NCBI RefSeq assembly: GCF_006345805.1
Contig: NC_043013.1
Span: 8,742,001 to 8,806,000, forward strand
Length of the DNA: 64,000 bases
Direction of reading: 5' to 3'
DNA from: Octopus sinensis
Lineage: Eukaryota
Below, in pieces: positions 34,064 to 62,931 of this stretch. The notes beneath the pieces are model-generated. The model was not told where the DNA came from and made no database searches. It saw only the letters and a program-made list of their open reading frames with translations. Position 1 is the stretch's first letter; the number at the start of each line of letters is the position of its first letter. The translations under genes and the position numbers were made by a program.

Positions 34064-34198
34064 TAATATTCTCTGTATGCACCATATTCCCTTTAATATT
34101 TCTTATTCATAATAATATGTGTTTATCTTAAATGGAATGCTGAACAGTTCTCACAATTGTTCATAACATTTTTTTCTTTTCGTCTCTTTTTCTCAAAG

Positions 34199-34311
34199 GA
34201 ATGCAAGACTGCCCTTACTATGTCCGAGCAGAGCTGCTTGGGGACAAACTCGCACGTAATCTTCCAGATTTCAAAATTCACAAAATTGTGAAAACAACTG
34301 CAGAATGGCCG
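34199..34311 (+). CDS. MDH1B: MDH1B coding exon 2
   Basis: Polypyrimidine tract and aag|; encodes (G)[37 protein letters not shown]; |gttagt donor; 113 nt, phase 1 to 0. Confidence 0.92.
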
Positions 34312-39816: not shown

Positions 39817-40122
39817 TATGTGTGTGTATTTGCACAAGTGTGTGTGTATTTGTATATGTTCTTTCTTTTGTTCTTTTATTTGTTTCAGTCATTTGACTGT
39901 GGCCATGCTGGAGCATCACCTTTAGTGAAACAAATCGACCCCGGGACTTATTCTTTGTAAGTCAAGTCCAGCACTCATTCTATCGGTCTCTTTTGCTGAA
40001 CTGCTAATTTACGAGGGTGTAGACACACCAACATTGGTTGTTAAGCGATGGTGGAGAGACAAACACAGATACACAAATACACAGACACACACACACACAC
40101 ATGCACACACACACACACACAT

Positions 40123-40161
<39 letters not shown>

Positions 40162-40335
40162 ACAAAGTACACACATACATACGACAGACTTCTTTCAGTT
40201 TCTGTCTACCAAATCCACCCACCAGGTTTTGATTGGCCTGAGGCTATAGTAGAAGACACTTGCCCAAGGTGCCATGCAGTGGGACTGAACCTGGAGTCAT
40301 GAGATTGGGAAGCAAGCTTCTTTCCACACAGCACT

Positions 40336-40378
<43 letters not shown>

Positions 40379-42110: not shown

Positions 42111-42417
42111 TCATAACCTGACTCTAGACTTCCTAACCTGCATTTAAAAGCTCATATCATTATTTGGTTACCACATGATATCCTACATCGGGGTATATTC
42201 TAGGGCTGAATGCACATGTGGAATTCTGCTCTACATTAGATTGACACAAGGATAATATAACATGGGGTTGGAGGATAATAAGCTTTAACTGTAGATCACA
42301 ACATTTATTTCTTCCTTGCATGAAAGCTTTAAGTTGCTTTGTTTATATTCCAACCACTGACATAGCATTCTTGATGAAAACAAAGCTGTTTAGAAATACT
42401 TTCTTTTCTATTACCAG

Positions 42418-42548
42418 GTTGGTATGGTGTTCCAGAAGGCATCGCTTTTTCATTCCCAGTAGCATTTTATCTACCATTAGCATATTCTGTCATTGAAAAT
42501 CTGAGTATATCTGAAAAATGCAGAGAAGATATGGATTTAATAATCGAA
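42418..42548 (+). CDS. MDH1B: MDH1B coding exon 4
   Basis: ccag| ... |gtaagt; (G)WYGVPEGIAFSFPV... matches the MDH-family YGVP.G..FSFPV motif; 131 nt, phase 1 to 0. Confidence 0.9.
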
Positions 42549-43029
42549 GTAAGTATCTTGGATTTTTTTTTCTCTATTTTGGTTTTTAATCTCTAAACAT
42601 TTAAATCCTTTTGTTACCAACCCGGCTGAAACCGGCTCTGGCTCTGACTACAAATGTCTTGTTTTCATAAGTTTTAAATTAAAATCTTCCACCAAACCTT
42701 AGTCACAATTTATGTTCCTAACACTAGCTTAATGATAACTAAGTTATTTTACTCAATTCTTTGTTATATTTAAAGTAATTGAAAGAAACAAAAATCATCT
42801 TAAAATAAATGCAGTAACGAAAGGGTTGAATCCTTTTGCAACCATATCAATTATGAAATTCGCTATCCATGATAGATTTAGGAAAACAATCTATCTCTAG
42901 GTTATTAAGATGGTGTTTGGAATATACCAAAAATGTTCTTTGATAAAATTATGCCAAAAAGGTTATACACTTGCCCAAGATGCCACGCAGTGGGACTGAA
43001 CCTGGAACCATGTATAAACAGTTTGAAAT

Positions 43030-44150: not shown

Positions 44151-44436
44151 CCTCCACACCCACACTCACACACACACACACACACACACACACATCATCC
44201 TCAACATCCATATCATGATCATCATTATCATCATCATCATTATCATCATCATTGTCATCATTTAAATGGTGGTGGTAGTGGTGGTGGTGGTGGTGGTAGT
44301 GGTGGTGATGATGTGTATGTGTGTGTGTCTATGTATTTATGAAGCAGAAGTCTTCTTTCTTCATGCATCATTTTACATATGAAACCTTCATTTTGGTCAC
44401 TGGTGTACATTAATTAATATGTTATATTTTTGACAG

Positions 44437-44611
44437 AACTTGGTAAAAGATAGAGCCTTGTTTGTAGTCAAGGATGGAAAATTGATCTCAAAAGTTGTGT
44501 CTGTTGAATCATTACCAGAATCAGAAGATACTGATTACTCAGCGTTTATGAGTTCCAGAACACCGTCCAGTCAAAGAAGTGACGTCTTAAGCTTTCTCTT
44601 GGAAGAAATGG
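44437..44611 (+). CDS. MDH1B: MDH1B coding exon 5
   Basis: ttttgacag|AAC...ATGG|gtaagg; open NLVKDRALF...FLLEEM; 175 nt, phase 0 to 1, compatible with both neighbours. Confidence 0.8.
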
Positions 44612-45892: not shown

Positions 45893-45942
<50 letters not shown>

Positions 45943-47368
45943 AGGTGCAGGAGTGGCTGTGTGGTAAGTAGCTTGCTTACCAACCACATGGTTCCGGGTT
46001 CAGTCCCACAGCGTGGCACCTTGGGCAAGTGTATTCTACTATAGCCTCGGGCTGACCAAAGCCTTGTGAGTGGATTTGGTGGACGGAAACTGAAAGAAAC
46101 CCGTCGTATATATGTATATGTATATATATATGTGTGTGTGTGTGTTTGTGTGTCTGTGTTTGTTCCCCCGTATCTTATGGTGTGTTTACGGCCCCCGTAT
46201 CTTAGCGGTTCGGCAAAAAAGACCAATAGAATAAGTTTTAGGCTTACTAGGAATAAATCCTGGGGTTGATTTGCTCAACTAAGGGCAGTGCTCCAGCATG
46301 GCCGCAGTCAAATGACTGAAACAAGTAAAAGAGTAAAGAGAGAATATGAATTATACAATAGCTGAAGTGTACATTATTATAATATCCATCAATACCAATC
46401 TTACCAGTTGGTTTTGCACCAGAGATTCAAAAGAGTGTTAGGTAACAATCCAATCATGTAACCCTACACTCTTCATAGCTACATACAATTTATATCTGGA
46501 TATTTCTACTTTTCTATTCAGTGTTTACTTCACTAAAGCACCTCTTTTGTTTTTAATGAAATACAGAGCTAGTCAAAGTGCCATGTCAGAGAATTGCCTT
46601 TGATGTTCATGTTTGGTTTGCATGCTAGCAGGAGTTAGAGGGTAGGAGTGAAGTACAGAGATGTAGATGTGGTGGTGTGGTGGTGGTGGTGGTAGGTGGT
46701 GGGTGGAGAATCATTCAGGAGATTAATTGATTACTCTTTTACTCTTTTACTTGTTTCAGTCATTTGACTGCGGCCATGCTGGAGCACCACCTTTAGTCGA
46801 GGAAATCGACCCCGGGACTTATTCTTTGTAAGCCCAGTACTTATTCTATCGGTCTCTTTTGCTGAACCGCTAAGTGACGGGGACGTAAACACACCAGCAT
46901 CGGTTGTCAAGCAATGCTAGGGGGACAAACACAAACACACACACATACACGTATATATATATATATCATCATCATCATCATCATCATTTAGCGTCCGTTT
47001 TCCATGCTAGCATGGGTTGGACGGTTCAACTGGGGTCTGGGGAGCCCGAAGGCTGCACCAGGCCAGTCAGATCTGACAGTGTTTCTACAGCTGGATGCCC
47101 TTCCTAACGCCAACCACTCCGAGAGTGTAGTGGGTGATTTTATGTGCCACCGACACATATACATATATACGACAGGCTTCTTTCAGTTTCCGTCTACCAA
47201 ATCCACTCACAAGGCATTGGTCAGCCCGGGGCTATAGTAGAACACACTTGCCCAAGATGCCATGCAGTGGGGCTGAACCCGGAACCATGTGGTGGATAGC
47301 AAGCTACTTACCACACAGCCACTCCTGATTGATTGCTTTTTATATATATATTTTTTTTTCTAATTCAG

Positions 47369-47592
47369 TTGAAGAACAAGAAGCACTGGAGAGGAGACAT
47401 ACGAAAATGTCCGCATCCTCAATGCCCCGTGGGAGCCTAGACAGTGAGCACGACTTGGAGCTTGAAAATCTAGACGCTATAATGCCTGAAGAAGAGGTGG
47501 AAGAGGAAATTTCAGAAACTGCATTAAATACTGAAGATATTGAGATAGAAGATAATAATAATAATCCACCAGCAGAAGAAACTGAACAATAA
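47369..47592 (+). CDS. MDH1B: MDH1B terminal coding exon 6 (copy 1)
   Basis: T-rich tract and ttcag|TT completing GTT (Val); acidic tail ...PPAEETEQ*; total CDS with the intact exon 3 is 1764 nt = 587 aa + stop. Confidence 0.78.
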
Positions 47593-47716
47593 TTAGTTTA
47601 TAATCTAAACTAAAATATTTTATTATTGAAAAAGATCAAAATATTTCTAGTTTTTATATTTCATTTTGATTATGATTTTTTTCTTCTTATTTCTTGTGGT
47701 GCTGGAGATAATGGGT

Positions 47717-48313
47717 AAGGCGGCAAGCTGGCAGAAACGTTAGCACGCTGGGTGAAATGCATAGCCGTATTTCGTCTGCCGTTACGTTCTGAGTTCAAAT
47801 TCCACCGAGGTCGACTTTGCCTTTCATCCTTTCGAGGTCGATAAATAAAGTACCAGTTTCGCACTGGGGTTGATGTAATCGACTTAATCCATTTGTCTGT
47901 CTTTGTTTGTCCTCTCTGTGTTTAGCCCCTTGTGGGTAATAAAGAAATAGGTATTTCGTCTGCCGTTACGTTCTGAGTTCAAATTCCACCGAGGTCGACT
48001 TTGCCTTTCATCCTTTTAAGGTCGATAAATAAAGTACCAGTTTCGCACTGGGGCTGATGTAATCAACTTAATCCCTTTGTCTGCCTTTGTTTGTCCTCTC
48101 TGTGTTTAGCCCCTTGTGGGTAATAAAGAAATAGGTATTTCGTCTGCCGTTACGTTCTGAGTTCAAATTCCACCGAGGTTGACTTTGCCTTTCATCCTTT
48201 CGAGGTTGATAAATAAAGTACCAGTTTTGCACTGGGGTTGATGTAATCGACTTAATCCCTTTGTCTGTCTTTGTTTGTCCCCTCTATGTTTAGCCCCTTG
48301 TGGGTAGTAAAGA
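47717..48313 (+). repeat. SINE family B concatemer: one head + three 184-bp bodies
   Basis: GTATTTCGTCTGCCGTTACG at 47767, 47951 and 48135; duplicated at 50359-50955. Confidence 0.9.
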
Positions 48314-48559
48314 AATATATATTATATTTTGCAGCATACAATCTAAATTTTTCAAGCCAAAATTTACAGCCAAAAATGAGGTACGAGGGACGTTCAATAA
48401 GTAATCCCCCTGACCCACTTGCAGTTGGAAGGGCATCCAGCTGTAGAAACTCTGCCAGATCAGATTGGAGTCTGGTGCAGCCTCTGCCTCACCAGTCCTC
48501 AGTCAAACCGACCAACCCATGCCAGCATGGAGGGCGGACGTTAAACGATGATGATGATG

Positions 48560-48603
<44 letters not shown>

Positions 48604-50010
48604 AGTGCTGTATGGAAAGGAGCTTGCTTCCCAACCTAATGATTCCAGGTTCATTCCCACTGCATGGCACCTTGGGCAAGTGTCTTCTTCTATAGCCTCA
48701 GGTCAATCAAAACCTTGTGAGTGGATTTGGTAGGCAGAAACTGAAAGAAGTCTGTCATATGTATGTGTGTGTGTGTGTGTGTGTGTTTGTGTGTCTGTGT
48801 TTGTTCCCCCGTATCTTATGGTGTGTTTACGGCCCCCGTATCTTAGCGGTTCGGCAAAAAAGACCAATAGAATAAGTTTTAGGCTTACTAGGAATAAATC
48901 CTGGGGTTGATTTGCTCAACTAAGGGCAGTGCTCCAGCATGGCCGCAGTCAAATGACTGAAACAAGTAAAAGAGTAAAGAGAGAATATGAATTATACAAT
49001 AGCTGAAGTGTACATTATTATAATATCCATCAATACCAATCTTACCAGTTGGTTTTGCACCAGAGATTCAAAAGAGTGTTAGGTAACAATCCAATCATGT
49101 AACCCTACACTCTTCATAGCTACATACAATTTATATCTGGATATTTCTACTTTTCTATTCAGTGTTTACTTCACTAAAGCACCTCTTTTGTTTTTAATGA
49201 AATACAGAGCTAGTCAAAGTGCCATGTCAGAGAATTGCCTTTGATGTTCATGTTTGGTTTGCATGCTAGCAGGAGTTAGAGGGTAGGAGTGAAGTACAGA
49301 GATGTAGATGTGGTGGTGGTGGTGGTGGTGGTAGGTGGTGGGTGGAGAATCATTCAGGAGATTAATTGATTACTCTTTTACTCTTTTACTTGTTTCAGTC
49401 ATTTGACTGCGGCCATGCTGGAGCACCACCTTTAGTCGAGGAAATCGACCCCGGGACTAATTCTTTGTAAGCCCAGTACTTATTCTATCGGTCTCTTTTG
49501 CTGAACCGCTAAGTGACGGGGACGTAAACACACCAGCATCGGTTGTCAAGCAATGCTAGGGGGACAAACACAAACACACACACATACACGTATATATATA
49601 TATATATCATCATCATCATCATCATCATTTAGCGTCCGTTTTCCATGCTAGCATGGGTTGGACGGTTCAACTGGGGTCTGGGGAGCCCGAAGGCTGCACC
49701 AGGCCAGTCAGATCTGACAGTGTTTCTACAGCTGGATGCCCTTCCTAACGCCAACCACTCCGAGAGTGTAGTGGGTGATTTTATGTGCCACCGACACATA
49801 TACATATATACGACAGGCTTCTTTCAGTTTCCGTCTACCAAATCCACTCACAAGGCATTGGTCAGCCCGGGGCTATAGTAGAACACACTTGCCCAAGATG
49901 CCATGCAGTGGGGCTGAACCCGGAACCATGTGGTTGGATAGCAAGCTACTTACCACACAGCCACTCCTGATTGATTGCTTTTTATATATATATTTTTTTT
50001 TCTAATTCAG

Positions 50011-50234
50011 TTGAAGAACAAGAAGCACTGGAGAGGAGACATACGAAAATGTCCGCATCCTCAATGCCCCGTGGGAGCCTAGACAGTGAGCACGACTTGG
50101 AGCTTGAAAATCTAGACGCTATAATGCCTGAAGAAGAGGTGGAAGAGGAAATTTCAGAAACTGCATTAAATACTGAAGATATTGAGATAGAAGATAATAA
50201 TAATAATCCACCAGCAGAAGAAACTGAACAATAA
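50011..50234 (+). CDS. MDH1B: MDH1B terminal exon 6 (copy 2, identical)
   Basis: Same acceptor and same coding sequence as 47369-47592. Confidence 0.75.
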
Positions 50235-51200
50235 TTAGTTTATAATCTAAACTAAAATATTTTATTATTGAAAAAGATCAAAATATTTCTAGTTTTTATA
50301 TTTCATTTTGATTATGATTTTTTTCTTCTTATTTCTTGTGGTGCTGGAGATAATGGGTAAGGCGGCAAGCTGGCAGAAACGTTAGCACGCTGGGTGAAAT
50401 GCATAGCCGTATTTCGTCTGCCGTTACGTTCTGAGTTCAAATTCCACCGAGGTCGACTTTGCCTTTCATCCTTTCGAGGTCGATAAATAAAGTACCAGTT
50501 TCGCACTGGGGTTGATGTAATCGACTTAATCCATTTGTCTGTCTTTGTTTGTCCTCTCTGTGTTTAGCCCCTTGTGGGTAATAAAGAAATAGGTATTTCG
50601 TCTGCCGTTACGTTCTGAGTTCAAATTCCACCGAGGTCGACTTTGCCTTTCATCCTTTTAAGGTCGATAAATAAAGTACCAGTTTCGCACTGGGGCTGAT
50701 GTAATCAACTTAATCCCTTTGTCTGCCTTTGTTTGTCCTCTCTGTGTTTAGCCCCTTGTGGGTAATAAAGAAATAGGTATTTCGTCTGCCGTTACGTTCT
50801 GAGTTCAAATTCCACCGAGGTTGACTTTGCCTTTCATCCTTTCGAGGTTGATAAATAAAGTACCAGTTTTGCACTGGGGTTGATGTAATCGACTTAATCC
50901 CTTTGTCTGTCTTTGTTTGTCCCCTCTATGTTTAGCCCCTTGTGGGTAGTAAGAAATATATATTATATTTTGCAGCATACAATCTAAATTTTTCAAGCCA
51001 AAATTTACAGCCAAAAATGAGGTACGAGGGACGTTCAATAAGTAATCCCCCTGACCCACTTGCAGTTGGAAGGGCATCCAGCTGTAGAAACTCTGCCAGA
51101 TCAGATTGGAGTCTGGTGCAGCCTCTGCCTCACCAGTCCTCAGTCAAACCGACCAACCCATGCCAGCATGGAGGGCGGACGTTAAACGATGATGATGATG

Positions 51201-51246
<46 letters not shown>

Positions 51247-51402
51247 AGTGCTGTATGGAAAGGAGCTTGCTTCCCAACCTAATGATTCCAGGTTCATTCC
51301 CACTGCATGGCACCTTGGGCAAGTGTCTTCTTCTATAGCCTCAGGTCAATCAAAACCTTGTGAGTGGATTTGGTAGGCAGAAACTGAAAGAAGTCTGTCA
51401 TA

Positions 51403-51445
<43 letters not shown>

Positions 51446-52034
51446 ATGTGTGTGTGTCGGTGTATTTGTGTGTCTGTGTTTGTCTCTCCACCATCGCTTA
51501 ACAACCAATGTTGGTGTGTCTACACCCTCGTAAATTAGCAGTTCAGCAAAAGAGACCGATAGAATGAGTGCTGGACTTGACTTACAAAGAATAAGTCCCG
51601 GGGTCGATTTGTTTCACTAAAGGTGATGCTCCAGCATGGCCACAGTCAAATGACTGAAACAAATAAAACAACAAAAGAAAGAACATATACAAATACACAC
51701 ACACTTGTGCAAATACATACACACACACACACACATAGACACACACACACACACACTCATGGAAACTAGTATTTTTGGTACTCATTTTCAATTAAGTGGA
51801 AAATCTGGAAACCAAAAGAAGCAGCACAAATGCTAGGACACAAGAAGCTCCTAAGCAGATCGAGTGCAGATATGAACAGCATATGGGAACCGGTATTAAG
51901 GAAGGATAGGAGAATATTAGAGTTATAAGCCCTAAAATTTACTCCATAGTTGCTCATGGGCATATGGCATAGTGGTTAAGAGTGCAGGCTACTAACCCCG
52001 AGATTCCGGGTTTGATTCCAGGCAGTGACTGGAT

Positions 52035-52239
52035 AATGATGATGATGATGATGGTGATGGTGATGATGATGATGATGATGGTGATGATGGTGATAGTGAT
52101 GATGGTGATGATGATGATGGTGATGGTGATGATGATGGTGGTGATGATGATGATGATGGTGGTGATGATGATGGTGATGGTGATGTGGATGATGATGATG
52201 ATGATAGTGGTAGTGGCAGTGGCGGCGGTGATGGTGATA

Positions 52240-52304
<65 letters not shown>

Positions 52305-52361
52305 GATGGTAATAGTGGTGGTGGCGGCGGCGGTGATGGTGATGATGATGATGATGATGAT
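52035..52361. repeat. Expanded interrupted (GAT/GGT/GGC)n tract
   Basis: ~325 bp here versus ~45 bp of (ATC)n at the homologous position ~39453-39495. Confidence 0.9.
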
Positions 52362-52504
52362 TTCGTTGTCGTCATAAATTTCATGACTAGCTGTTCAAGA
52401 AAAATGCTCTCTAAAGAACTAAACTGGAACTTTCGCTTCTAAAGAATTTAACGCTGACTGCAACCGAAATGAATTAAGATTAAATACGGAAGAATTTTGC
52501 TTAC

Positions 52505-53603
52505 CATCGGATATAAGAGTCGCAGAGAATATGGCATTTGATGATAAACCATTCCACCAGTAATTTAATGTTGTTGTTATGGCATGACCAATGAGATGGT
52601 AGGTAGGGTGCCGTAAATTCATTTCATTGACGTGTTTTCTTGAACTGACTTCATTTACATACTCCTTCTTGAGCCAGCTTTGTTGATGAAAAATATCATT
52701 TAATGGCTGAGAGAATGTAGCTGGACCAACAACTGCACAATCAAACTCTCTAACTAAAGTCTTGTCCAATTCTATCAAATAATCATTGCTGATACTTCCC
52801 AATATAACAACGTTATCAATGGAGCAGCTGCTTGCTGGCAGTTTTTCAGCTAAAACAGATTTGGCCTGGTTTTCAATTACTTTTGAAACACCAATAATAT
52901 TTCTGGATGAAATGTGAGAAACAATCTCATTTAATATGCTCATATTTAAACACATGTAATTATTTCCTGCAACTAATAGCAACGTGTCACTTTTGGCAAC
53001 TTTCAACAGAGTTGTCCCATAAAACCCAAAAAGAACAGCGTTTCTTTCCGTCCACCGATGTACTTTTTCCTCTTCTTTCCTTTCTACCTCATCCAAAAAG
53101 ATAATAATTCTACTTCCTTTAAAAGCTTTTTCACAGTCAGATGTAACAAAGACATTCAAATACAGAAGTCCATAAGCCATGTTTTGTATATTTTCAGCGA
53201 TGTATTGCAATTCAGCTGTCTGTGCTGGATCGCAGTCCAGAAGACACAATGAAATTTTCTCTTCACCAAATATTTTCCCTGAGAGTAAACTGTCGACCAA
53301 ACTGAAACAAACTGGGCTACTAGCATTTGTTATGCACACTTTAATGAATTTTTCGTTTCTTATCCTTTCTCTTTCTTCTTCATCAAGTTCGATTTTAGTG
53401 GTTTGATTTTCATAAGCAATGACTTTCATACTTTTGCCGTCCAAATCAATAGTAACGCCATAGTAGCCGTATGCATATTCTTCAAATTCATTCGATCCAC
53501 CAATTAAAACACCTTTTCCACCTCGATCAACCAATTCTCTCCAAATTATTGGTGATTGTTCATGCTTCCAACCATTTGCCTCACATATTTCACAAAGCCA
53601 TTC
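52505..53603 (-). CDS. MDH1B: MDH1B exon 3, inverted frame-intact copy (1099 nt)
   Basis: Part of the 397-aa ORF 52419-53612: [43 protein letters not shown]...[11 protein letters not shown]...ISDG; acceptor and donor retained; no other MDH1B exon found on the minus strand in this window. Confidence 0.9.
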
Positions 53604-54889
53604 CTGAATCACACAAAGTTAAGCAAAAATTAAAACTAACATAAAATTGAATTGAAACATTGATAAAGCATAGGTATTAACTATTATATCATAGCCATTA
53701 ACTATTGCAGAAATTCAATTTCCTCTAGGAAAAATGTTTGTGTACACACAATTATAATCTTTTGAGCAATACGTATAAAATATGCATGCACACGAGCAAG
53801 TGCACAGCTTAAAGGAAACAGTGCACCTAAGATTGCACTGAGCTGCACACCATCATCGAGTGTAGAGACGCAGCAACTGTCATATATATATCTTTTCCCT
53901 TTTGAATCTTTTACTTGTTTCAGTCATCAGACTGCGGCCATGCTGGGGCAGCGCTTTGAAGAATTTTAGTTGAATGAATCGATCCTAGTCTTTATTATTT
54001 TCATTTTAAGCCAGGTACTTATTTCATTGGTCTCCTTTTGCTGAACTGCTAAGATATGGGGACATAGACACCAACACTGGCTGTCAGGTGATGGTGGGGG
54101 CAAACATAGACTCAAAGACATGCACACATGCACACACACACACACACACATATACTCATACAGAGGCAAGGACTGAGACCATTTGGCATTATGCTGTGCT
54201 TTGGGTGTTGGGCTTTTGTCATTATGCCAAGCTTGAGAAGAAGACCCACCAAGCCAAGTAAAACCACAGGCGTGGTAGATACTGGTGTCACACAAACTGC
54301 ACCAGTGTCAGTAGAACGTATAAAGCACCCATTACACTCTTAGAGTGGTTGGCATTAGGAAGGGCATCCAGCCATAGAAACCATGCCAAAACAGACTGGA
54401 GTCTGGTGTAGCCTTCCATCTTACTAGCTCTGGTTGAACCGTCCAGCCCATTCCAGCATGGATAATGGATGTTAAATGATGATGGTGATGATGATGATGA
54501 TGATATGCTAAGACTCCCTTCGGTCATGACTGACCATGGGATTGCACCTAGAAAGTTACCCTCTGAGGCACAAGTCTGCGCAAGGTTGTTTATGGAAAAC
54601 CAGCAGTCGCTCATGCATACCGGCCTCCCCTCTGCATGCCACCAGTGTTATCCAAAGGAAAGGCAAAGGCCGATACAGCTTGGCATCAGTGACATTGTAA
54701 ATCATTTCTACAGTTGAGTGAACTGGAGCAACATGAAATAAAGTGTCTTGCTCAAGAACACAACATGCAGCCCGGTCCAGGATTCAAACTCACAACCTCA
54801 CAATCGTAAGATCAACGCTCTAACCACTGAACCATATGCATTCACAGATGATAATGATAATGATGATGATGATATATATATATATATAG

Positions 54890-56832
54890 TTGTGTGCAAA
54901 AGTGCTACACCCTAGCAGTGGAGGGAACCTGTGGAAGAGGTAGACCCAGGAAAACCTGGGACGAGGTGGTGAAGCACGACCTTCGAACTTTAGGTCTCAC
55001 TAAGGAAATGTCTAGAGACCGAGACCTATGGAAGTATGCTGTGCATGAGAAGACCCGGCAAGACTAGTCAGGCCATAACCCGTGGCCCCGACCTGGGACG
55101 TAGTCAGTCCTGTGCATACCTTCCTTCTTGTGACACTTATGAAGACCTGTTGAGGCAAGTGAAAATCAAATCTAATCAAATCAAAACAAATCAAAATAGA
55201 TGAACATCAGTGGAATTGTATTCTTTGTGGTACCAGTGCCGGTGGCACACAAGAAAACCACCCAAACGTGGCCGTAACCAGTACCGCATCGACTGGCCTC
55301 CGTGCTGTGGGCACAACAAACACCATCCGATCGTGGCCGTTCGCCAGCCTCATCTGGCACCTGTGCCGGTGGCACATAAAGACACCATCCGAAGACCCGG
55401 CGACGTAGTCAGTCCACCTATGCATACCTTCCCTCTTATGACACTTGTGAAGACCTGTTGAGGCAAGTGTGGGACACTTGTGAAGACCTGTTGAGGCAGA
55501 GGCAAGTGTGTGACACTTGTGGAGACCTGTTGAGGCAAGTGTGTGACCCTTGTGAAGACCTGTTGAGGCAAGTGAAAATCAAATCAAACCAAATCAAAAT
55601 AGATGAATATCAATGGAATTTGTATCTTTGTGGTTCCAGTACCGGTGGCACACAAGAAAACCATCCGAGCGTGGCCGTAGCTGGTACCGCATCGACTGGC
55701 CTCCGTGCTGTGGGCACAACAAACACCATCTGATCGTGGCCGTTCGCCAGCCTCACCTGGCACCTGTGTCGGTGGCACATAAAAACACCATCCAAAGACC
55801 CGGTGACGTAGTCAGTCCACCTGTGCATACCTTCCCTCTTACGACACTTGTGAAGACCTGTTGAGGCAGAGGCAAGTGTGTGACACTTTGTGAAGACCTG
55901 TTGAGGCAGAGGCAAGTGTGTAACACTTGTGGAGACCTGTTGAGGCAAGTGTGTGACACGCGTGACACTTGTGAAGACCTGTTGAGGCAAGTGAAAATCA
56001 AACCAAATCAAAATAGATGAACATCAATGGAATTTGTATCTTTGTGGTTCCAGTACCGGTGGCACACAAGAAAACCATCCGATCATGGCCGTTCGCCAGC
56101 CACATCTGGCACCTGTGTCGGTGGCACATAAAGACACCATCCGAAGACCCGGCGACGTAGACAGTCCACCTGTGCATACCTTCCTTCTTGTGACACTTGT
56201 GAAGACCTGTTGAGGCAAGTGAAAATCAAATCAAATCAAATCAAATCAAGTCAAAACAAATCAAAATAGATGAACATAAATGGAATTTGTATCTTTGTGG
56301 TACCAGTGCCGGTGGCACACAAGAAAATCATCCGAACGTGGCCGTAGCCAGTACCGCATAGACTGGCCTCCGTGCTTTGGGGACGTAACAAACACCATCC
56401 GATCGTGGCCGTCCGCCAGCCTCATCTGGCACCTGTGTCGGTGGCACATAAAAACACCATCCGAGCGTGGCCGTCTGCCAGCCTCGTCTGGCACCTGCCA
56501 GCCTCATCTGGCACCTGTGTCGGTGGCACATAAAAACACCATCCGAGCGTGGCCGTCTGCCAGCCTCGTCTGGCACCTGTGTCGGTGGCACATAAAAACA
56601 CCATCCGAGCGTGGCCGTTCGCCAGCCTCGTCTGGCACCTGTGTCGGTGGCACATAAAATCACCCACTACACTCTCGGAGTGGTTGGCGTTAGGAAGGGC
56701 ATCCAGCTGTAGAAACACTGCCAGATCTGACTGGCCTGGTGCAGCCTTCGGGCTCCCCAGACCCCAGTTGAACCGTCCAACCCATGCTAGCATGGAAAGC
56801 GGACGCTAAATGATGATGATGATGATGATGAT
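54890..56832 (+). mobile_element. RTE LINE 3' end with a 3' UTR amplified into nested tandem modules
   Basis: Begins with the ORF end (EGTCGRGRPRKTWDEVVKHDL); ~310-405-bp modules restart near 55090, 55401, 55805 and 56155, each with variable numbers of ~30-bp GACACTTGTGAAGACCTGTTGAGGCA units; ~61-bp units near 56400-56650; (GAT)n tail. Confidence 0.88.
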
Positions 56833-57085
56833 ATAAATATGTGTTTGTTTGTGTGTACTCCCCAAATTGCATGCATAAAATTTATGCAAACTACAAGAAC
56901 TATAGACCCACCCGGCATCCCGATTGACGACATCCCACCCAAAAAACCCCCCCAACCCCACCGTTCCCCCAGCACCCCCGATTAACTTTCCTCCTAAGAC
57001 TATTCACAGATTGTATATGTACACTTGTATATATGTATTGTATATATGGATAGAAATGAATGGGTGTAAGTAGGAATATACGCAT

Positions 57086-57225
57086 GTGTGTGAGTGCGTG
57101 TATATGTATGTGTATATGTGTATGTACATGTGTATGTGTGTATGCGTGGGTTTTTTTTATACACTTATATATATGTATATATATATGAGTATGTGTGTAT
57201 GTGTGTGGTTTTTTATATACTTATA

Positions 57226-57274
<49 letters not shown>

Positions 57275-57443
57275 GTATGTGTATATGTATATGTATGTAT
57301 ATGTGTATGTATGTGTATGTGTATGTATGTATATGTATGTATATATGTGTATATATATGTGTGTATGTATGTGTGTGTATATATGTATGTGTATATATAT
57401 ATGTGTAGATATATATATATATATGTGTGTATATATATATATG

Positions 57444-57487
<44 letters not shown>

Positions 57488-58400
57488 GTATGTGTATATG
57501 TATATGTATGTATATGTGTATGTATGTGTATGTGTATGTATGTATATGTATGTATATATGTGTATATATATGTGTGTATGTATGTGTGTGTATATATGTA
57601 TGTGTATATATATATGTGTAGATATATATATATATATGTGTGTATATATATATATGTATATATATATATATGTGTATGCTCGTGTGTTTAAGTATATGTA
57701 AGTATGTAAAGTTGTGTGTATGTGCATGTATATATGTATATATACATATGTGTAGATAGGTATATGCATGTATGCTTATATGTATGTTTCCGTCTGTACA
57801 AAGGGTAACTGCATGTGTATATATATCTATTATTTATTATTCATTATTTATTACATGAGTATGCGTTTGTATGCATGTATGTATTTATGTATATAAGGAG
57901 GCGCGTGAGTGTGTGTATGTGTATGCATTCGTATAGACATATGTATACATTTATGCATGTATGTGCTTGTGTGTATGTATGTGTGTATATGTATGTATAT
58001 ATGCACACATGTATATATATATGTATATATATATATATATATGTATGTGTATATATATATATATGTGTGTATGAGTATGTGTATATATATGCGTGTAAAA
58101 ATGTGTGTGTAAATGTATGTATATATGTGTGTGTATGTATGTGTGTGTATATGTGTATGTGTGTATATATGTATGTGTATATGGATATATATATATATAT
58201 ATATATATGTGTATGTATGTGTGTGTATGTATATATATATATATATATATATGTACGCTTGTGTGTTTATGTATATGTAGGTATGTAGAGTTATGTGTGT
58301 ATGTATTTATGTACATATACATATGTGTAAATAGGTATATATGGGTATGTTTATATGTATGTATCCGTATGTATAATGGGTAACTGCAAGTATATATATA

Positions 58401-58452
<52 letters not shown>

Positions 58453-58640
58453 TTGAGTATGCATGTATGTATATATGTATATGCCTGTATGCATGTATGT
58501 ATTTATGAACATAAGGAGGCGCGTGTGTGTGTGGATGTGCATGCATATGTATAGATATGTGTATACATTAATGCATGTATGTACTTATGTGTATATATAG
58601 ATGTGCGTGTGTGTGTGTGTGTATGTGTACGCATATGTAT

Positions 58641-58674
<34 letters not shown>

Positions 58675-58681
58675 GTGTGTG

Positions 58682-58712
<31 letters not shown>

Positions 58713-59374
58713 ATGTGTATATATGTATGAATGTATATGTGTATGTATATGTACATGTATATGTATGTATATATATATATGTATATGTGTATGTATATGT
58801 ATGTATGTGTATGTATGTGTATATGTGTATATATATATTAATTAGTGTATATGTAGGGACTAGTCTTATGTGAGTGTTTTGAGGTATGTATGTGTATGCG
58901 TGTATGTGAATATACATGAATGTATGCGTGTGCGTATGTGTATGTGTGTACGTCTGAGTGTGTGGGCGTGAGTGAGTGAGTGCTTGCGTTTGTATAAGTA
59001 AGTAGATAGATAAACGGAATCTTAAGCTCATCCCTTGAGACCGGCTGACCTCGGCCAAGATAAAAATAAAAATAAAAATAAAGATATAAACAAATGTAGT
59101 AATAATAAAATTAAAATAAGAGAATAAAAATGTGTGTGTATGTGTGTGCATGTATATGCATTTGTATAGGTGCGTGTGAGTATACATATGTGTATGTATA
59201 TGTATGTATATGTGTATCTGTGTGTACGTTCATGGGTATGTGTATGTATATGTATATATATGTATGTATATATATGTATATGTATGTGTATGTATGTGTA
59301 TATATATATGTATGTATATGTGGGTATGTATGTATATGTACAGATATATGTGAATATGTGGGTGTATATATGTG

Positions 59375-59416
<42 letters not shown>

Positions 59417-59420
59417 GATA
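57086..59420. repeat. 2.3-kb compound (TG)/(TA)/(TATG)n low-complexity block
   Basis: Visible composition; ~213-bp internal tandem duplication (57261/57474) and a diverged ~575-bp repeat (57801/58378). Confidence 0.9.
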
Positions 59421-59827
59421 TGTACAAGTGAGAGTCTCCTTACTTACCTAAAACTCTATTTTTCTATTTATTTTTTTATTCTTTTATTTTATTTTATTTA
59501 TTCTTTTATCTACTTTACCACCGATTCCTTTGACCACTCCCCTAATAATGACAGTTTTGCGCCATGCCTACCCCCAAAAAAGTCCCCCACCACCACCCAT
59601 TTAAACCTGCCTAAATGTATAAATGCCAAAACAACTCTTGTCTACTAGCTTCCTGATGATTTCTTTTGAATGAAACAGTTCTAGTCCTGTAGAAGCTCCT
59701 TCTATATAATAAATTAATTTACTCTGCTATGTATTGAGTACCTTATTTACTGTGGTTAACCCCGACTCAACCCGGGACCTACATATATATATATATATAT
59801 CTATATATATATTAATATGTGTGTGTT

Positions 59828-59883
<56 letters not shown>

Positions 59884-60465
59884 TATTGGCCTGCTTGCTT
59901 AGCCAGCGGGGTGGCGTCACTTGAAGGCTAAAACCATGCGAAGCGCATTGTGACCAGCGATGTGTAGCAAAATCTGATAGCCTGGTCAGTCACGGTGATC
60001 ACGGTGATATATTAATATGGTTAGTCCACAAAACTCAGTAAGGAGCACAGAACCAGTTTTCCAGTTTGTCTGGTCTGCAACATCCAAAAGTGGTCAATGC
60101 CAGAGCTCTCTGGTTGGCTCCCATGCTGGTGGCATGTAAAAAGCACCATCCAACATGGTCGATGCCAGGTCCACCTGACTGGCTCCTGACATGCTGGTGG
60201 CATGTAAAAAACATCCACTCACTCTCAGAGTGATTGGCATTAGGAAGGACATCAGCTGTAGAAACATTGCAAAATCAGATCGGAGCCTGGTGCAGCCAAT
60301 GGCTTCCCAGACATCAGTCAAACCATCTAACCCATGCCAGCATGGAAAACAGACGTTAAACGATGATGATGATGATGACGATGATGATGATGATGATATA
60401 TTCCTTACTGGATTACTCAATTTTGCCAGCTGAGTGGACTGGGGCAACGTGAAATAAAGTGATTT

Positions 60466-61063
60466 GTAAAATACTCCAATGCGACCGTACGACAGGCACC
60501 CATGCCAACCCCCTTTGCTTGTGAAGACATGTTGGGGCAAGCGAAATCGAAATCGAATTGAACCAGCCAGGATCCCTGGTCTGGTGGTACGTAAAAAGCA
60601 CTATCCGACTCGTGGCCGTGGCACGTAAAATACTCCAATGCGACCGTACGACAGGCACCCATGCCAACCCCCTTTGCTTGTGAAGACATGTTGGGGCAAG
60701 CGAAATCGAAATCGAATTGAACCAGCCAGGATCCCTGGTCTGGTGGTACGTAAAAAGCACTATCCGACTCGTGGCCGATGCCAGCACCGCCTCGACTGGC
60801 TTCCGTGCCGGTGGCACATAAAATACACCAATCTGACCGTGGCCGTTGCCAGCCTCGCCTGGCATCTGTGCAGGTGGCACGTAAAAAGTACCCACTACAC
60901 TCACGGAGTGGTTGGCGTTAGGAAGGGCATCCAGCTGTAGAAACATTGCCAGATTAGACTGGAGCCTGGTGCAGCCTTCTGGCTTCCCAGAACCCCGGTC
61001 GAACCGTCCAACCCATGCTAGCATGGAGAACGGACGTTAAACGATGATGATGATGATGATGAT
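60466..61063 (+). mobile_element. 5'-truncated RTE 3' UTR copy, same subfamily as 12993-16910
   Basis: Near-identical reverse complement of ~12995-13590 with the same 159-bp repeat; interrupts another repeat (GTGAAATAAAGTGATTTG | TCTCAAAGAATACAATG). Confidence 0.9.
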
Positions 61064-62831
61064 GTCTCAAAGAATACAATGCATTGTCCGATCCATGAAT
61101 GAAAGCCATGAACTCATGATCAGAACTCCAACACCCTAACCACTAAGCCATGCACCTCCACTACACACACACACACATATTATAAGGTGAGCTGGCAGAA
61201 TCATTAGCACGCCAGACAAAATGCATAGCGGTATTTTGTCTGTCTTTATGTTCTGAGTTCAAATTCCACCGAGATCGACTTTGCCTTTCATCCTTTTGGG
61301 GGGTTGACTGAATAAATACCCGTTATGTACTAGGGTTGATGTAATCAACATAATTCCTTTGTCTGGTCATGTCGGTCCCCTCTATGTTTAGACCCCTGTG
61401 GGTAATAAATATATATATATAGTTATCTGTATGCCCCCCCACACACACATATGCATACATACATATATAAAACAAAAAGGGAAGCACCCACTACACTCTC
61501 GGAGTGGTTGGCGTTAGGAAGGGCATCCAGCTGTAGAAACTCTGCCAGATCAAGATTGGAGCCTGGTGCAGCCATCTGGTTCGCCAGCCCTCAGTCAAAA
61601 TCATCCAACCCATGCTAGCATGGAAAGCGGACGACCAAAGCCTTGTGAGTGGATTTGGTAGATGGAAACTGAAAGAAGCCTGTCATATAATTACATTTAT
61701 ATATATGCGTGTGTGTGTTTGTCCCCCCAGCATTGCTTGACAACTGATGCTGGTGTGTTTATGTCCCCATTACTTGGCGGTTCGGCAAAAGAGACCGATA
61801 GAATAAGTACTGGGCTTACGAAAGAATAAGTCCCGGGGTCGATTTGCTCGATTAAAGGCAGTGCTCCAGCATGGCCGCAGTCAAATGACTGAAACAAGTA
61901 AAAGAGTAAAAGAGTAAAAGAGTACCCCTACAAACAGGGTAAATGTATCTATTACTCCATTGATTGGATAAATGGTGAACAACTTTAACCCTCTAGCATT
62001 CAGATTACTTATTTAATACTTATTTATTCACATTTCAGAAAGGTTTAAATTCAGGATATACAAGATCCAAATTTTGAATGAAGTGCAAAAGTTCGTATTA
62101 CCATAACAAATACTTCTGCAGGTTACAGAGAAATTTATAGAGAGTGAAAAAAGGCTTCTTCTAAGCAAACAACTCTATATTTGGTTTTTAAACAGAAATC
62201 TACAAGTCCGTCTACGAGTGCTTGTGAATTGGCGATTGGGTCTACAAGTGATGGTGTGCGCGAGTCAAGTGCGAGTAAAAGTTAATATTAATGCGAATTA
62301 ATATTCGTTTCAAATTTTAGCACAAGGCCAGTAATTTATGATGAGTGATTAAGTCGAATACATCGACCTCAGTACATGACTGGTACTTATTTTATCGACC
62401 CTGAAAGGAATAAAAGGCAAAGTCGACCTTGGCGAAATTTGAACTCAGAACGTAAAAACGAACGAAATGCCGCTAAGCATTTCGTCCGGCGTGCTAACGA
62501 TTTTGTTAGCTCGCCCGCCTTTAAATATACGCCGGATAAAATCATTAACAGTATTTCGTCTGTCTTTATGTTCCAAGTTCAGATTCCACCGAGGATGACT
62601 TTGCTTTTCATCCCTTCGGGGTCGCTAAAATAAGTACCAGTTGAGTACTGGAGTCAGTGTAATAGACTTAACTACTCCATCGAAATGCTGGCCTTGTACG
62701 AAAATCTGAAACCAAAATTTATATATTTAAACGCGGCAAGCAGGTAAAATCGTTATGGCGCCGGGGAAAATGCTTAGCGACGTTTCTTCCGACTTTGCGT
62801 TCTGAGTTCAAAGACCGTCGGGGTCGGCTTT

Positions 62832-62931
62832 NNNNNNNNNNNNNNNNNNNNNNNNNNNNNNNNNNNNNNNNNNNNNNNNNNNNNNNNNNNNNNNNNNNNN
62901 NNNNNNNNNNNNNNNNNNNNNNNNNNNNNNN
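62832..62931. other. Assembly gap (100 N)
   Basis: Run of N. Confidence 1.

What the first reader, a model, noticed from the sequence alone, without database searches (positions are those of the whole stretch)
51068..53791. Orphan inverted MDH1B exon 3 downstream of the gene: conserved exon, diverged flanks, built-in antisense/dsRNA potential
The copy keeps an open frame and both splice sites but has no partner exons on the minus strand in this window. The exon differs by ~0.5% (6/1099) while the sampled intron flank differs by ~3% (8 substitutions + a 5-bp indel in ~290 bp), with more in the SINE part. That contrast implies selection, gene conversion, or an allelic haplotype placed inverted. 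It starts ~0.8 kb past the second terminal exon, and I saw no clear AATAAA right after the stop codon. Read-through could therefore fold a ~2.5-kb duplex over the gene's main coding exon, a possible self-regulating ADAR/siRNA system. The left junction abuts a mariner-TIR-like stub (TACGAGGGACGTTCAATAAG, ~51022).
Basis: partly seen in the sequence, partly recalled or inferred. Interest (0 to 1): 0.7.

Follow-up and report, generated by a model that had tools for sequence, protein, structure and literature searches.

The report
Inverted partial MDH1B gene copy, octopus
The "orphan" inverted exon is the visible part of a real inverted partial copy of the octopus MDH1B gene, at least 11.6 kb long and shared by two sister species; it is an ordinary segmental-duplication relic, and nothing here shows a regulatory RNA role.

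Summary
The window is Octopus sinensis CM016875.1:8,742,001-8,806,000. The inverted repeat is real: 38025-40517 (+) against 53792-51062 (-).

Three parts of the finding need correcting.
- In this window the + strand exon 3 is the broken copy. It has 7 one-base deletions, 2 two-base insertions and about 5 private substitutions. The inverted copy is intact.
- The inverted copy is not an orphan of 2.7 kb. It runs from 51062 to the assembly gap at 62832, collinear with the 5' half of an intact MDH1B paralogue. It lacks the first coding exon and exons 4-6.
- It is not an assembly artefact. The junction is conserved almost base for base (3 differences in 231 nt) in three loci of the independent O. 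vulgaris assembly, where the copy is annotated as PIF1-like/MDH1B chimeric genes. No second copy lies within 10 kb of O. bimaculoides MDH1B.

Across species the inverted exon differs at 2-4 of 1101 sites, against 1.1-3% in its flanks. Variant blocks are shuffled among copies, which indicates gene conversion; selection on the exon itself is not excluded.

The dsRNA/ADAR idea stays untested. Five AATAAA lie between the stop codon and the arm, and the intact O. sinensis MDH1B copy 160 kb away has no inverted partner within 10 kb downstream.

The parts
34195..34311 (+). Copy A (+ strand MDH1B): first coding exon ([14 protein letters not shown]...)
   Evidence: tblastn of P0002/P0003, 97% identity
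38025..40517 (+). Plus arm of the inverted repeat: 189 nt of intron 2, exon 3 and 1.2 kb of intron 3. It ends inside a repeat element.
   Evidence: Self-BLAST and pairwise alignment
38214..39309 (+). Copy A exon 3. Frame broken by 7 one-base deletions and 2 two-base insertions, plus about 5 private substitutions. Splice sites intact.
   Evidence: no other copy in three species shares these changes
42402..42563 (+). Copy A exon 4 (limits from tblastn)
44434..44610 (+). Copy A exon 5 (limits from tblastn)
45908..51443 (+). Tandem duplication of the terminal-exon unit. Period 2657 nt; units 45908-48564 and 48565-51221, plus a 222-nt third start; 98% identity. It is bounded by the same SINE-like element at 45936, 48602 and 51245. 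The unit is single-copy in O. vulgaris.
47368..47591 (+). Terminal coding exon, copy 1 (includes the stop codon)
   Evidence: tblastn, 98.6% identity
50010..50233 (+). Terminal coding exon, copy 2 (includes the stop codon)
   Evidence: tblastn, 98.6% identity; sequence read
50409..50958 (+). 184-nt x3 SINE-like tandem array carrying five AATAAA hexamers. Its twin is at 47767-48317.
50959..51061 (.). Junction segment between copy A's 3' flank and the inverted copy. It contains the 20-mer at 51023-51042. It is found in every locus that has the inverted copy and in neither locus without one.
51062..53792 (-).
52505..53603 (-). Copy B exon 3, 1099 nt, intact. It lies within ORF 52419-53612, which reads through the donor site into the intron. 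Residues 62-397 of that ORF match a 336-aa protein (P0031) held in public databases.
52032..52361 (.). (GAT)n microsatellite, expanded to 330 nt in the inverted arm against about 30 nt in the plus arm
53793..62831 (-). Continuation of inverted copy B, collinear with the intact paralogue L004.
- 52269-54888 matches L004 14066-11453.
- 59783-60467 matches L004 11410-10728.
- 61063-61633 matches L004 10730-10156.
- 61921-62666 matches L004 8957-7500.
- Insertions lie at 54889-59782 and 60466-61054.
- L004 8957-10156, which holds the first coding exon, is missing; a SINE sits there instead (61633-61917).
   Evidence: the O. vulgaris B copies show the same deletion
62832..62931 (.). 100-N assembly gap. 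It ends the traceable inverted copy. The sequence after it matches none of the related loci.

Best explanation
The feature is the proximal end of copy B, a real DNA-level inverted partial duplicate of the 5' half of MDH1B.

ANATOMY (shown)
- Copy B holds upstream region, intron 2, exon 3 and 1.45 kb of intron 3.
- It has lost the first coding exon and never contained exons 4-6.
- It lies tail-to-tail 0.83 kb downstream of a full-length copy A.

HISTORY (inferred)
- It arose by a complex segmental duplication. The event came after the split from O. bimaculoides (about 34 My) and before the O. sinensis / O. vulgaris split (about 2.5 My).
- That rearrangement divided the ancestral locus. Copy A kept the ancestral upstream flank. 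Copy C kept the ancestral UDPGP-side downstream flank. Copy B lies inverted next to A.
- Later, in O. sinensis only, unequal crossing-over between two SINE-like repeats duplicated the terminal-exon unit.

WHY THE EXON IS CONSERVED (inferred)
- Non-allelic gene conversion with MDH1B copies that are under purifying selection keeps B's exon 3 nearly identical to the functional exon, while its flanks drift.
- Weak selection on a truncated product may add to this.

FUNCTION
- B has no demonstrated function. Its most likely status is a transcribable but non-essential truncated paralogue or pseudogene.
- In this window copy A's exon 3 is the damaged one, either by real decay or by residual long-read consensus errors.
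For: IDENTITY OF THE WINDOW
- Window 42419-62831 matches L003 at 100%, which fixes the O. sinensis coordinates.

ARMS AND READING FRAMES
-.

EXTENT OF COPY B
- It is collinear with the intact paralogue L004 from 15065 back to 7500. The 1.2 kb holding the first coding exon is missing.
- The O. vulgaris B copies carry the same deletion and stay collinear with the window up to the gap.

THE JUNCTION IS REAL
- 231 nt across the junction differ at only 3 sites, all species-specific, in L001, L002 and L007.
- That assembly was built de novo from ONT and 10x reads (PMC10700109).

LOCI WITHOUT AN INVERTED COPY
- L004 and L006, the UDPGP-side loci, have no inverted copy and no junction 20-mer.
- O. bimaculoides L008 shows one exon 3 and no inverted copy within 10 kb either side of the gene.

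ANCESTRAL FLANKS
- Copy A's upstream region is collinear with the O. bimaculoides upstream region.
- Copy C's downstream region is collinear with the O. bimaculoides downstream region.

CONSERVATION OF THE EXON
- All exon 3 copies are 99.5-99.9% identical without indels, except W+ and one O. vulgaris B copy.
- B against B across species: 2-4 differences per 1101 nt, against 1.1-3% in the flanks.
- Orthologous dS is 0.013, which predicts about 14 neutral differences. Poisson P(<=4) is about 0.002 (my calculation).

GENE CONVERSION
- Exon sites 181 and 340 show all four allele combinations.
- Two linked variant blocks at -171..-162 and -72/-71 are distributed independently of copy type and of species.

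TANDEM DUPLICATION
- It is bounded by the same SINE-like element and is single-copy in O. vulgaris.
Against: - Gene conversion within a genome cannot by itself explain identity between species. The data fit purifying selection on B's own exon equally well (dN/dS 0.13-0.26, but from only 3-4 substitutions).
- If arm-to-arm conversion were frequent, W+ should not carry about 15 private changes. Only one variant, exon position 87, is shared exclusively by the two arms, and its alignment is ambiguous.
- Divergence rises sharply right at the 5' exon edge (10-11 differences per 190 nt). That pattern looks more like exon-limited constraint than like a conversion tract.
- Both species' public annotations call a protein on B. 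The O. vulgaris pipeline used RNA-seq and Iso-Seq among other inputs, so B may be expressed.
- The second junction of the rearrangement was not seen, so the A/B/C history is inferred.
Confidence: 0.68

Rival explanations
1. Copy B is an expressed, truncated MDH1B paralogue under purifying selection of its own. Transcription would start upstream, near the PIF1-like fragment. It would splice into exon 3, because exon 2 is deleted, and end by reading into intron 3. The product would be about 340-610 aa.
For: - The ORF is intact in 4 of 5 B copies across two species.
- Exon divergence is 0.2-0.4% against 1.1-3% in the flanks, and dN/dS is no higher than in the canonical gene.
- Both splice sites are kept.
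- Gene models exist in both annotations: P0031 in O. sinensis; P0001, P0006 and P0032 in O. vulgaris.
Against: - One B copy (L001-) has a frameshift, which its gene model skips with an artificial intron.
- The product would end in the middle of the Ldh_1_C domain, which spans residues 369-451 while exon 3 ends near residue 404.
- The exon-3 ORF alone hits no Pfam family.
- Variants are shared with A and C copies, which points to conversion.
- No read-assembled (Logan) octopus contig encoding this product is on record. That is weak evidence, because none is on record for the canonical gene either.
- The substitution counts are too small for a dN/dS test.
Confidence: 0.17
2. The convergent A-B arrangement is a dsRNA or antisense module. 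Read-through of A past its poly(A) sites, or B transcripts running into A's 3' end, would pair with exon 3. The duplex would feed ADAR editing or endo-siRNA production that tunes MDH1B.
For: - The arms are 98% complementary over 1.46 kb, with perfect runs of 301, 251 and 196 nt.
- The arrangement has been kept in two species for at least 2.5 My.
- On the minus strand, the first AATAAA after B's exon is at 50266-50261, 28 nt from A's stop codon. A B transcript would therefore probably overlap A's 3' end.
- Coleoid cephalopods edit RNA extensively (general knowledge).
Against: - No expression data of any kind were available.
- Five AATAAA lie between A's stop codon and the arm.
- In this window A's exon 3 is not coding-competent.
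- The intact O. sinensis copy C has no inverted partner within 10 kb downstream.
- In the O. vulgaris canonical copies the shared arm has shrunk to 1.64 kb through an intron-3 deletion.
- Persistence for 2.5 My needs no selection.
Confidence: 0.07
3. Assembly artefact: an allelic haplotype or a chimeric read was placed in inverted orientation.
For: - The region is multi-copy, repeat-rich and close to a 100-N gap.
- The O. sinensis assembly shows single-base deletions in exon 3 of two copies, W+ and L009.
- It also holds a suspicious 2.4-kb perfect palindrome elsewhere in the window.
Against: - The exact junction is present, with 3 species-specific substitutions, in three loci of an independent ONT-based assembly of another species.
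- The B copies share their own derived features: loss of exon 2 and the junction segment.
- B's flanks differ from A's by 2-9%, more than allelic divergence would give.
Confidence: 0.03
4. A Helitron captured MDH1B exon 3, which would explain the PIF1-like/MDH1B chimeric gene models.
For: In O. vulgaris the exon is annotated in one gene with a PIF1 2B-domain fragment (Pfam PF21530, E = 4e-13).
Against: - The PIF1-like fragment lies upstream of exon 2 in full-length units too: about 8 kb upstream in L004, 12-13 kb in L001, and also in L006 and L009. It is therefore simply part of the duplicated unit.
- B is collinear with more than 11 kb of introns and upstream DNA, not with a captured exon.
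- There is no PIF1-like sequence in the window.
Confidence: 0.02

Closest known systems
Inverted segmental duplications or palindromes with arm-to-arm gene conversion (for example the human Y-chromosome ampliconic palindromes; from my own knowledge)
   Same: - Two reverse-complementary arms contain a gene segment.
- Identity in the coding part is much higher than neutral drift predicts.
- Variants are shared in mosaic fashion among copies, as conversion produces.
   Different: - The arms are very asymmetric: a full gene against a truncated 5' half.
- The spacer is 10.5 kb and holds exons 4-6 and a tandem duplication.
- The high identity is confined to the exon plus about 170 nt.
- In this window one arm has escaped homogenisation, or is mis-assembled.
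DUP-TRP/INV-DUP and fold-back type complex rearrangements (replication template switching; from my own knowledge of human genomic-disorder loci)
   Same: - Direct, inverted and direct copies (A+, B-, C+) lie on one chromosome.
- The inverted piece begins inside the gene and runs backwards.
- The junction lies in or next to repeat elements.
- The ancestral flanks are split between the two direct copies.
   Different: - Only one junction was seen.
- B and C share an upstream block, with the PIF1-like fragment, that is absent upstream of A and absent within 10 kb upstream of O. bimaculoides MDH1B. More than one event is therefore needed.
- A/B and C lie 0.16 Mb apart in O. sinensis and 2.1 Mb apart in O. 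vulgaris.
Hairpin-RNA and pseudogene-derived endo-siRNA loci (Drosophila hpRNA loci, mouse oocyte pseudogene/gene duplexes) and inverted-repeat ADAR substrates (from my own knowledge)
   Same: An inverted duplicate of a coding exon lies close to its parent gene. It has long perfect complementary runs that would form dsRNA if both were co-transcribed.
   Different: - No transcript, small-RNA or editing evidence exists here.
- Poly(A) signals lie between the gene and the arm.
- The arms are 12-15 kb apart in the primary transcript.
Unprocessed (duplicated) pseudogene or truncated gene duplicate
   Same: - Intron flanks are retained and exons are missing at both ends.
- The ORF ends by reading into the intron.
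- One O. vulgaris copy has a frameshift.
   Different: The exon is not decaying at the neutral rate. Its ORF is intact in 4 of 5 copies, and both species' annotations call it a protein-coding gene.

Membership tests
DNA-level inverted segmental duplication | Two reverse-complementary arms with identity far above chance, and including non-coding flanks | tested here: met
   38025-40517 against 53792-51062, 98% and 91% identity. Introns, SINEs and microsatellites are included.
DNA-level inverted segmental duplication | The junction is reproducible in independent sequence data | tested here: met
   The same junction occurs in O. vulgaris L001, L002 and L007, with 228 of 231 nt invariant. That assembly was built de novo from ONT reads.
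Processed pseudogene / retrocopy | Intronless copy with a poly(A) tail and target-site duplications | tested here: not met
   The copy keeps intron 2 and intron 3 sequence and both splice sites.
Palindrome kept uniform by gene conversion | Variants shared among copies in patterns that fit no single tree (four-gamete violation, mosaic haplotype blocks) | tested here: met
   Exon sites 181 and 340 show all four combinations. The blocks at -171..-162 and -72/-71 are shuffled across copy types and species.
Palindrome kept uniform by gene conversion | The two arms of one locus are more alike than either is to copies elsewhere | tested here: not met
   W+ against W-: 10 substitutions and 8 indels in the exon. 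W- against O. vulgaris copies: 1-5 substitutions.
Helitron gene capture | The captured fragment and the Rep/PIF1-like helicase lie inside one element bounded by Helitron termini | tested here: not met
   The PIF1-like fragment also precedes full-length copies. Copy B is more than 11 kb of collinear genomic DNA. The termini themselves were not searched for.
mariner/Tc1 element (the 'TIR stub') | A terminal inverted repeat with a partner in inverted orientation, or multiple genomic copies of the end | tested here: not met
   With up to 3 mismatches in the window, and exact matching in the loci then fetched, the 20-mer is found only at the junction copies. It never appears as an inverted partner. 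No transposon library was available, so family identity remains untested.
hpRNA / endo-siRNA or ADAR-substrate locus | Long near-perfect complementarity between the two arms | tested here: met
   Perfect runs of 301, 251 and 196 nt; 1814 nt lie in runs of 40 nt or more.
hpRNA / endo-siRNA or ADAR-substrate locus | Both arms are present in one transcript or in overlapping antisense transcripts, with small RNAs or clustered A-to-I sites | not testable with these tools
   No RNA data were available. Sequence shows only five AATAAA hexamers between the stop codon and the arm.
MDH1B (protein family) | Full-length homology to MDH1B proteins, including the Ldh_1_C domain | tested here: not met
   The B exon is 99-100% identical to O. 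vulgaris MDH1B over residues about 38-404. It stops inside the Ldh_1_C domain, which spans residues 369-451, and it lacks exons 1-2 and 4-6.
Assembly artefact (haplotype placed inverted) | The junction is absent from independent assemblies, and the copies differ only at allelic level | tested here: not met
   The junction is conserved in O. vulgaris. Copy B has its own derived deletion and insertions.

The most novel reading that the evidence does not exclude
The tail-to-tail pair of a full MDH1B copy and an inverted exon-3 copy has been retained since before the O. sinensis / O. vulgaris split. It might be kept for one of two reasons. It could produce exon-3 dsRNA or antisense RNA that feeds ADAR or small-RNA pathways and tunes MDH1B. 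Or the inverted exon could serve as a conversion donor that protects the gene's largest exon. In this window the 'backup' is intact while the main copy is damaged.
Probability: 0.07. Interest if true: 0.6.

Novelty: new member of a known kind. Interest (0 to 1): 0.27.

Why it matters
Mostly as a correction and a caution. The locus is a multi-copy, partly inverted segmental duplication that misleads gene annotation. It yields PIF1-like/MDH1B chimeras, a 336-aa single-exon 'gene' and split partial proteins. It also misleads any reading of the + strand copy as 'the gene'.

It is a compact, datable case (between about 34 and 2.5 My) of a complex inverted duplication in a cephalopod genome. The same exon can be compared in A, B and C copies of two species, which suits a study of non-allelic gene conversion against selection.

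If RNA data showed co-transcription of the arms, the locus would become a tractable natural dsRNA substrate in an animal known for heavy RNA editing. Nothing here shows that.

Tried and rejected
- Pfam on the 370-aa exon-3 ORF: no family.
- tblastn of the PIF1-like N-terminus of P0032 against the window: nothing. The partner exon annotated in O. vulgaris is not in the window. The 1.07 kb after the gap matches none of the related loci.
- Helitron capture: rejected, because the PIF1 fragment also precedes full-length copies.
- Mariner TIR: the 20-mer is junction-specific and has no inverted partner.
- tRNA scan of 45-55 kb, to type the SINE-like repeats: no hits.
- Look-up of O. bimaculoides isoform X2 (P0003): not on record. 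Isoform X1 (P0033) worked.
- A 10-sequence MAFFT alignment of the distal flanks was unreliable, because the O. vulgaris canonical copies lack 2.5 kb of intron 3 and the microsatellites differ. Pairwise binned counts replaced it.
- Literature search for MDH1B and octopus: one unrelated preprint.
- The original O. sinensis assembly paper was not found in the held library. Its polishing method is therefore not documented here.
- An assembly-wide quality problem as the cause of the W+ indels: not supported for the rest of the gene. There are only 6 private short indels in about 5-6 kb downstream of exon 3. The excess is confined to exon 3 and remains unexplained.


Full report
WHERE THE WINDOW COMES FROM

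The 397-aa minus-strand ORF is 99-100% identical to 'putative malate dehydrogenase 1B' of Octopus vulgaris. Residues 62-397 of it are, letter for letter, a 336-aa protein (P0031) held in public databases. That protein is encoded once, on O. sinensis GCA_006345805.1 CM016875.1. Locus L003 matches window 42419-62831 at 100%. This places the window at CM016875.1:8,742,001-8,806,000, forward strand.

CHECKING THE OBSERVATION

Self-comparison confirms the inverted repeat. Positions 38025-39480 pair with 53792-52334 at 97.9%, and 39453-40517 pair with 52076-51062 at 91.4%. The exon is 1099 nt. It lies at 38214-39309 on the + strand and at 53603-52505 on the - strand, with identical acceptor and donor contexts.

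All of them are changes in the + strand copy. Seven are single-base deletions, mostly in short homopolymers. Two are two-base insertions (TA, CA). The net length change is -3. As a result the + strand exon has no long ORF; its longest is 170 aa. The inverted copy reads through completely. So the 'conserved orphan' is the intact copy, and the exon in the + strand gene is the broken one.

The arm begins 829 nt after the stop codon at 50231-50233. Five AATAAA hexamers lie in between, all inside a 184-nt x3 SINE-like array.

GENE STRUCTURE IN THE WINDOW

tblastn places MDH1B exons on the + strand at these positions:
- 34195-34311
- 38214-39311
- 42402-42563
- 44434-44610
- 47368-47589, and again at 50010-50231

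The last two are terminal exons inside a 2657-nt tandem duplication (45908-48800 against 48565-51443, 98% identity). Each unit starts with the same SINE-like element, at 45936 and 48602. The third copy of that element, at 51245, already belongs to the inverted arm. O. vulgaris has a single unit followed directly by the inverted arm. I infer that unequal crossing-over between the two direct SINE copies duplicated the unit in the O. sinensis lineage. That event also duplicated the junction (48382-48427 and 51023-51068).

THE INVERTED COPY IS MUCH LONGER THAN 2.7 KB

O. sinensis has a second, intact MDH1B about 160 kb away. This is P0028 = XP_036366224.1, locus L004, at 8.955-8.967 Mb on the + strand, with a UDPGP gene downstream. 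Against L004, the window's minus strand is collinear as follows:

| Window (minus strand) | L004 |
|---|---|
| 51068-51482 | 15065-14663 |
| 52269-54888 | 14066-11453 |
| 59783-60467 | 11410-10728 |
| 61063-61633 | 10730-10156 |
| 61921-62282 | 8957-8596 |
| 62299-62666 | 7867-7500 |

- The O. vulgaris B copies stay collinear with the window as far as 62831, at the 100-N gap.
- Insertions lie at 54889-59782 (AT-rich and microsatellite arrays) and at 60466-61054. The latter is a 589-nt element that also occurs, 99% identical, at 12993-13581.
- L004 8957-10156, which contains the first coding exon (10001-10111), is missing. A SINE sits there instead (61633-61917).

The object is therefore an inverted copy of at least 11.6 kb of the 5' half of the gene, which I call copy B. 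It lacks the first coding exon and everything beyond 1.45 kb of intron 3. After the gap, the last 1.07 kb of the window matches none of the related loci.

NOT AN ARTEFACT, AND SHARED WITH O. VULGARIS

The O. vulgaris assembly GCA_951406725.2 was built de novo from ONT and 10x reads (NextDenovo, Hypo, purge_dups, Omni-C; PMC10700109). It carries the same arrangement at three places on OX597830.1: L005/L007 at 67.17 Mb, L002 at 79.78 Mb and L001 at 79.84 Mb.

An alignment of 231 nt across the junction shows 228 invariant columns. The three differences are species-specific. It never appears as an inverted partner.

The O. vulgaris B copies share the loss of the first coding exon. They are annotated as 'PIF1-like/MDH1B' genes (P0001, P0006, P0032). 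These models join a PIF1 2B-domain fragment (PF21530, E = 4e-13), about 15-17 kb upstream, to exon 3, and end by reading into intron 3.

The PIF1-like fragment is not special to B. It also lies upstream of exon 2 in the full-length copies L004, L001, L006 and L009, about 8 kb upstream in L004 and 12-13 kb in L001. It is part of the duplicated unit, not a Helitron that captured the exon. No PIF1-like sequence is in the window. For B it would lie beyond the gap.

HISTORY (INFERRED)

- O. bimaculoides has one MDH1B with UDPGP downstream. It shows one exon 3, 93.1% identical with no indels, and no inverted copy within 10 kb either side of the gene.
- The window's copy A and O. vulgaris L007 keep the ancestral upstream flank. 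Window 1438-33366 is collinear with L008 649-14024, apart from large insertions.
- L004 and L006, which I call copy C, keep the ancestral downstream flank.
- B and C share more than 15 kb of upstream sequence, including the PIF1 fragment.
- On the O. sinensis chromosome the order is: upstream flank, A(+), B(-), then about 140 kb, then C(+), then UDPGP.

This direct-inverted-direct layout resembles complex template-switch rearrangements of the DUP-TRP/INV-DUP or fold-back type. I saw only one junction, however, and more than one event is needed.

The published dates are about 34 My for the split from O. bimaculoides and about 2.5 My for O. sinensis against O. vulgaris. They bracket the origin of B, with one caveat: only 10 kb on either side of the O. 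bimaculoides gene was examined.

WHY THE EXON IS SO WELL CONSERVED

Across ten copies, exon 3 differs at 1-6 sites and has no indels. The exceptions are W+ and one O. vulgaris B copy, which has a 1-nt insertion.

| Comparison | Exon 3 | Flanks |
|---|---|---|
| B against B across species | 2-4 of 1101 (0.2-0.4%) | about 1.1% at -900..-190; 1.8-3.5% in intron 3; 5-6% in the 190 nt just upstream |
| Orthologous C copies | dS 0.013, dN 0.0034, dN/dS 0.26 | same ratio as against O. bimaculoides (dS 0.19, dN/dS 0.25) |

At 1.3% neutral divergence, about 14 differences are expected in a neutral exon. Poisson P(<=4) is about 0.002 (my calculation). So B's exon has not evolved neutrally.

Two mechanisms fit: conversion by constrained copies, and selection on B itself.

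Evidence for conversion:
- Exon sites 181 and 340 show all four allele combinations.
- Two linked variant blocks upstream (-171..-162, five sites; and -72/-71) are distributed independently of each other, of copy type and of species.

Evidence against conversion as the whole story:
- The sharp rise of divergence at the exon edge.
- Between-species identity, which conversion within a genome cannot create.
- The failure of W+ to be homogenised.

B-specific substitutions number only 3-4, so dN/dS has no power.

THE DAMAGED + STRAND EXON

W+ has about 5 private substitutions in exon 3, four of them amino-acid changes: E15D, R78K, M221I and R331Q. That is about 0.5%, the same rate as its private substitutions in about 5-6 kb of downstream intron and exon alignment (31 there). 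This looks like neutral decay.

Its 9 short indels in 1.1 kb contrast with 6 in those 5-6 kb. About 1 would be expected, so P < 1e-4 (my calculation). An indel-to-substitution ratio above 1 is unusual for real evolution.

A further O. sinensis copy, on the unplaced scaffold VCDQ01003340.1 (L009), also has two private single-base deletions in exon 3. It is annotated as two partial proteins. Residual long-read consensus errors in a multi-copy segment are a serious alternative to true pseudogenisation. Only reads can decide. The orthologous O. vulgaris copy A (P0029) is intact.

THE dsRNA IDEA

Complementarity is ample if both arms were ever in one RNA, or in overlapping antisense RNAs. Perfect runs reach 301, 251 and 196 nt. 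On the minus strand, the first AATAAA after B's exon lies at 50266-50261, next to A's stop codon. A B transcript would therefore probably overlap A's 3' end.

No expression, editing or small-RNA evidence was obtainable. Five poly(A) hexamers precede the arm. The intact O. sinensis gene (C) has no inverted partner within 10 kb downstream. I keep this reading at low probability.

VERDICT

This is a real, evolutionarily shared, inverted partial gene duplicate inside a cluster of MDH1B segmental duplications. Both species' annotations already call it a gene. It is a new member of a well-known kind. The regulatory interpretation is unsupported and untested.

Noticed in passing
window 19747-22134: A near-perfect 2.4-kb palindrome, centred near 20946 with a 21-nt loop and sub-arms up to 276 nt at 100%. 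It sits in a 9.4-kb stretch (12875-22323) that is absent from the orthologous O. vulgaris locus L007. It is either a real foldback element or a fold-back artefact of long-read assembly.
   Followed up: partly
window 38214-39309: The + strand exon 3 has about 8 times more private short indels per kb than the rest of the same gene copy, yet the same private substitution rate. No other copy shares any of these changes. Unexplained: either consensus errors or real decay.
   Followed up: partly
window 45908-51443: The terminal-exon unit is tandemly duplicated (period 2657 nt, 98% identity) and bounded by the same SINE-like element. O. vulgaris has one unit. The pattern fits unequal crossing-over.
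   Followed up: yes
window 47767-48317 and 50409-50958: 184-nt x3 arrays of a SINE-like unit lie directly after each terminal exon. Each array carries five AATAAA hexamers. ARAGORN finds no tRNA-like gene there.
   Followed up: partly
window 13984-16749 (-) and 35293-36793 (+): ORFs of a non-LTR retrotransposon (RVT_1 and PHD). A 1.5-kb fragment of the same family (90% identity) lies inside MDH1B intron 2 of copy A, in both O. sinensis and O. vulgaris.
   Followed up: partly
window 12993-13581 and 60466-61054: A 589-nt element, 99% identical, in inverted orientation, with an internal 159-nt tandem repeat. One copy is inserted in intron 2 of the inverted gene copy. It looks recently mobile.
   Followed up: no
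window 52032-52361 vs 39456-39486: The (GAT)n microsatellite has expanded to about 330 nt in the inverted arm, against about 30 nt in the plus arm.
   Followed up: no
window 62832-64000: A 100-N gap. The 1.07 kb after it matches none of the related MDH1B loci of either species, so the scaffold join interrupts the inverted copy.
   Followed up: partly
L009 (O. sinensis unplaced scaffold VCDQ01003340.1) 12708-13806: A further MDH1B copy of the C type, with the PIF1-like fragment upstream. Exon 3 has two private single-base deletions, and the copy is annotated as two partial proteins (XP_036354557.1, XP_029654234.2). It may be a haplotig of the 8.955-Mb locus.
   Followed up: partly
L001 and L002 (O. 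vulgaris OX597830.1, 79.78-79.88 Mb): Two more full A+B-type units lie within about 190 kb of the chromosome end, 95-98% identical to the 67.17-Mb unit. L001's full copy has the C-type upstream region (PIF1 fragment) and a 1.5-kb tandem array in 4 copies. These are either further duplications or uncollapsed haplotigs.
   Followed up: no
window 40374-40625 and 43459-43710: Two copies of the repeat element in which the inverted arm ends. They lie in inverted orientation inside copy A (97% identity, 2.8 kb apart) and bracket exon 4.
   Followed up: no
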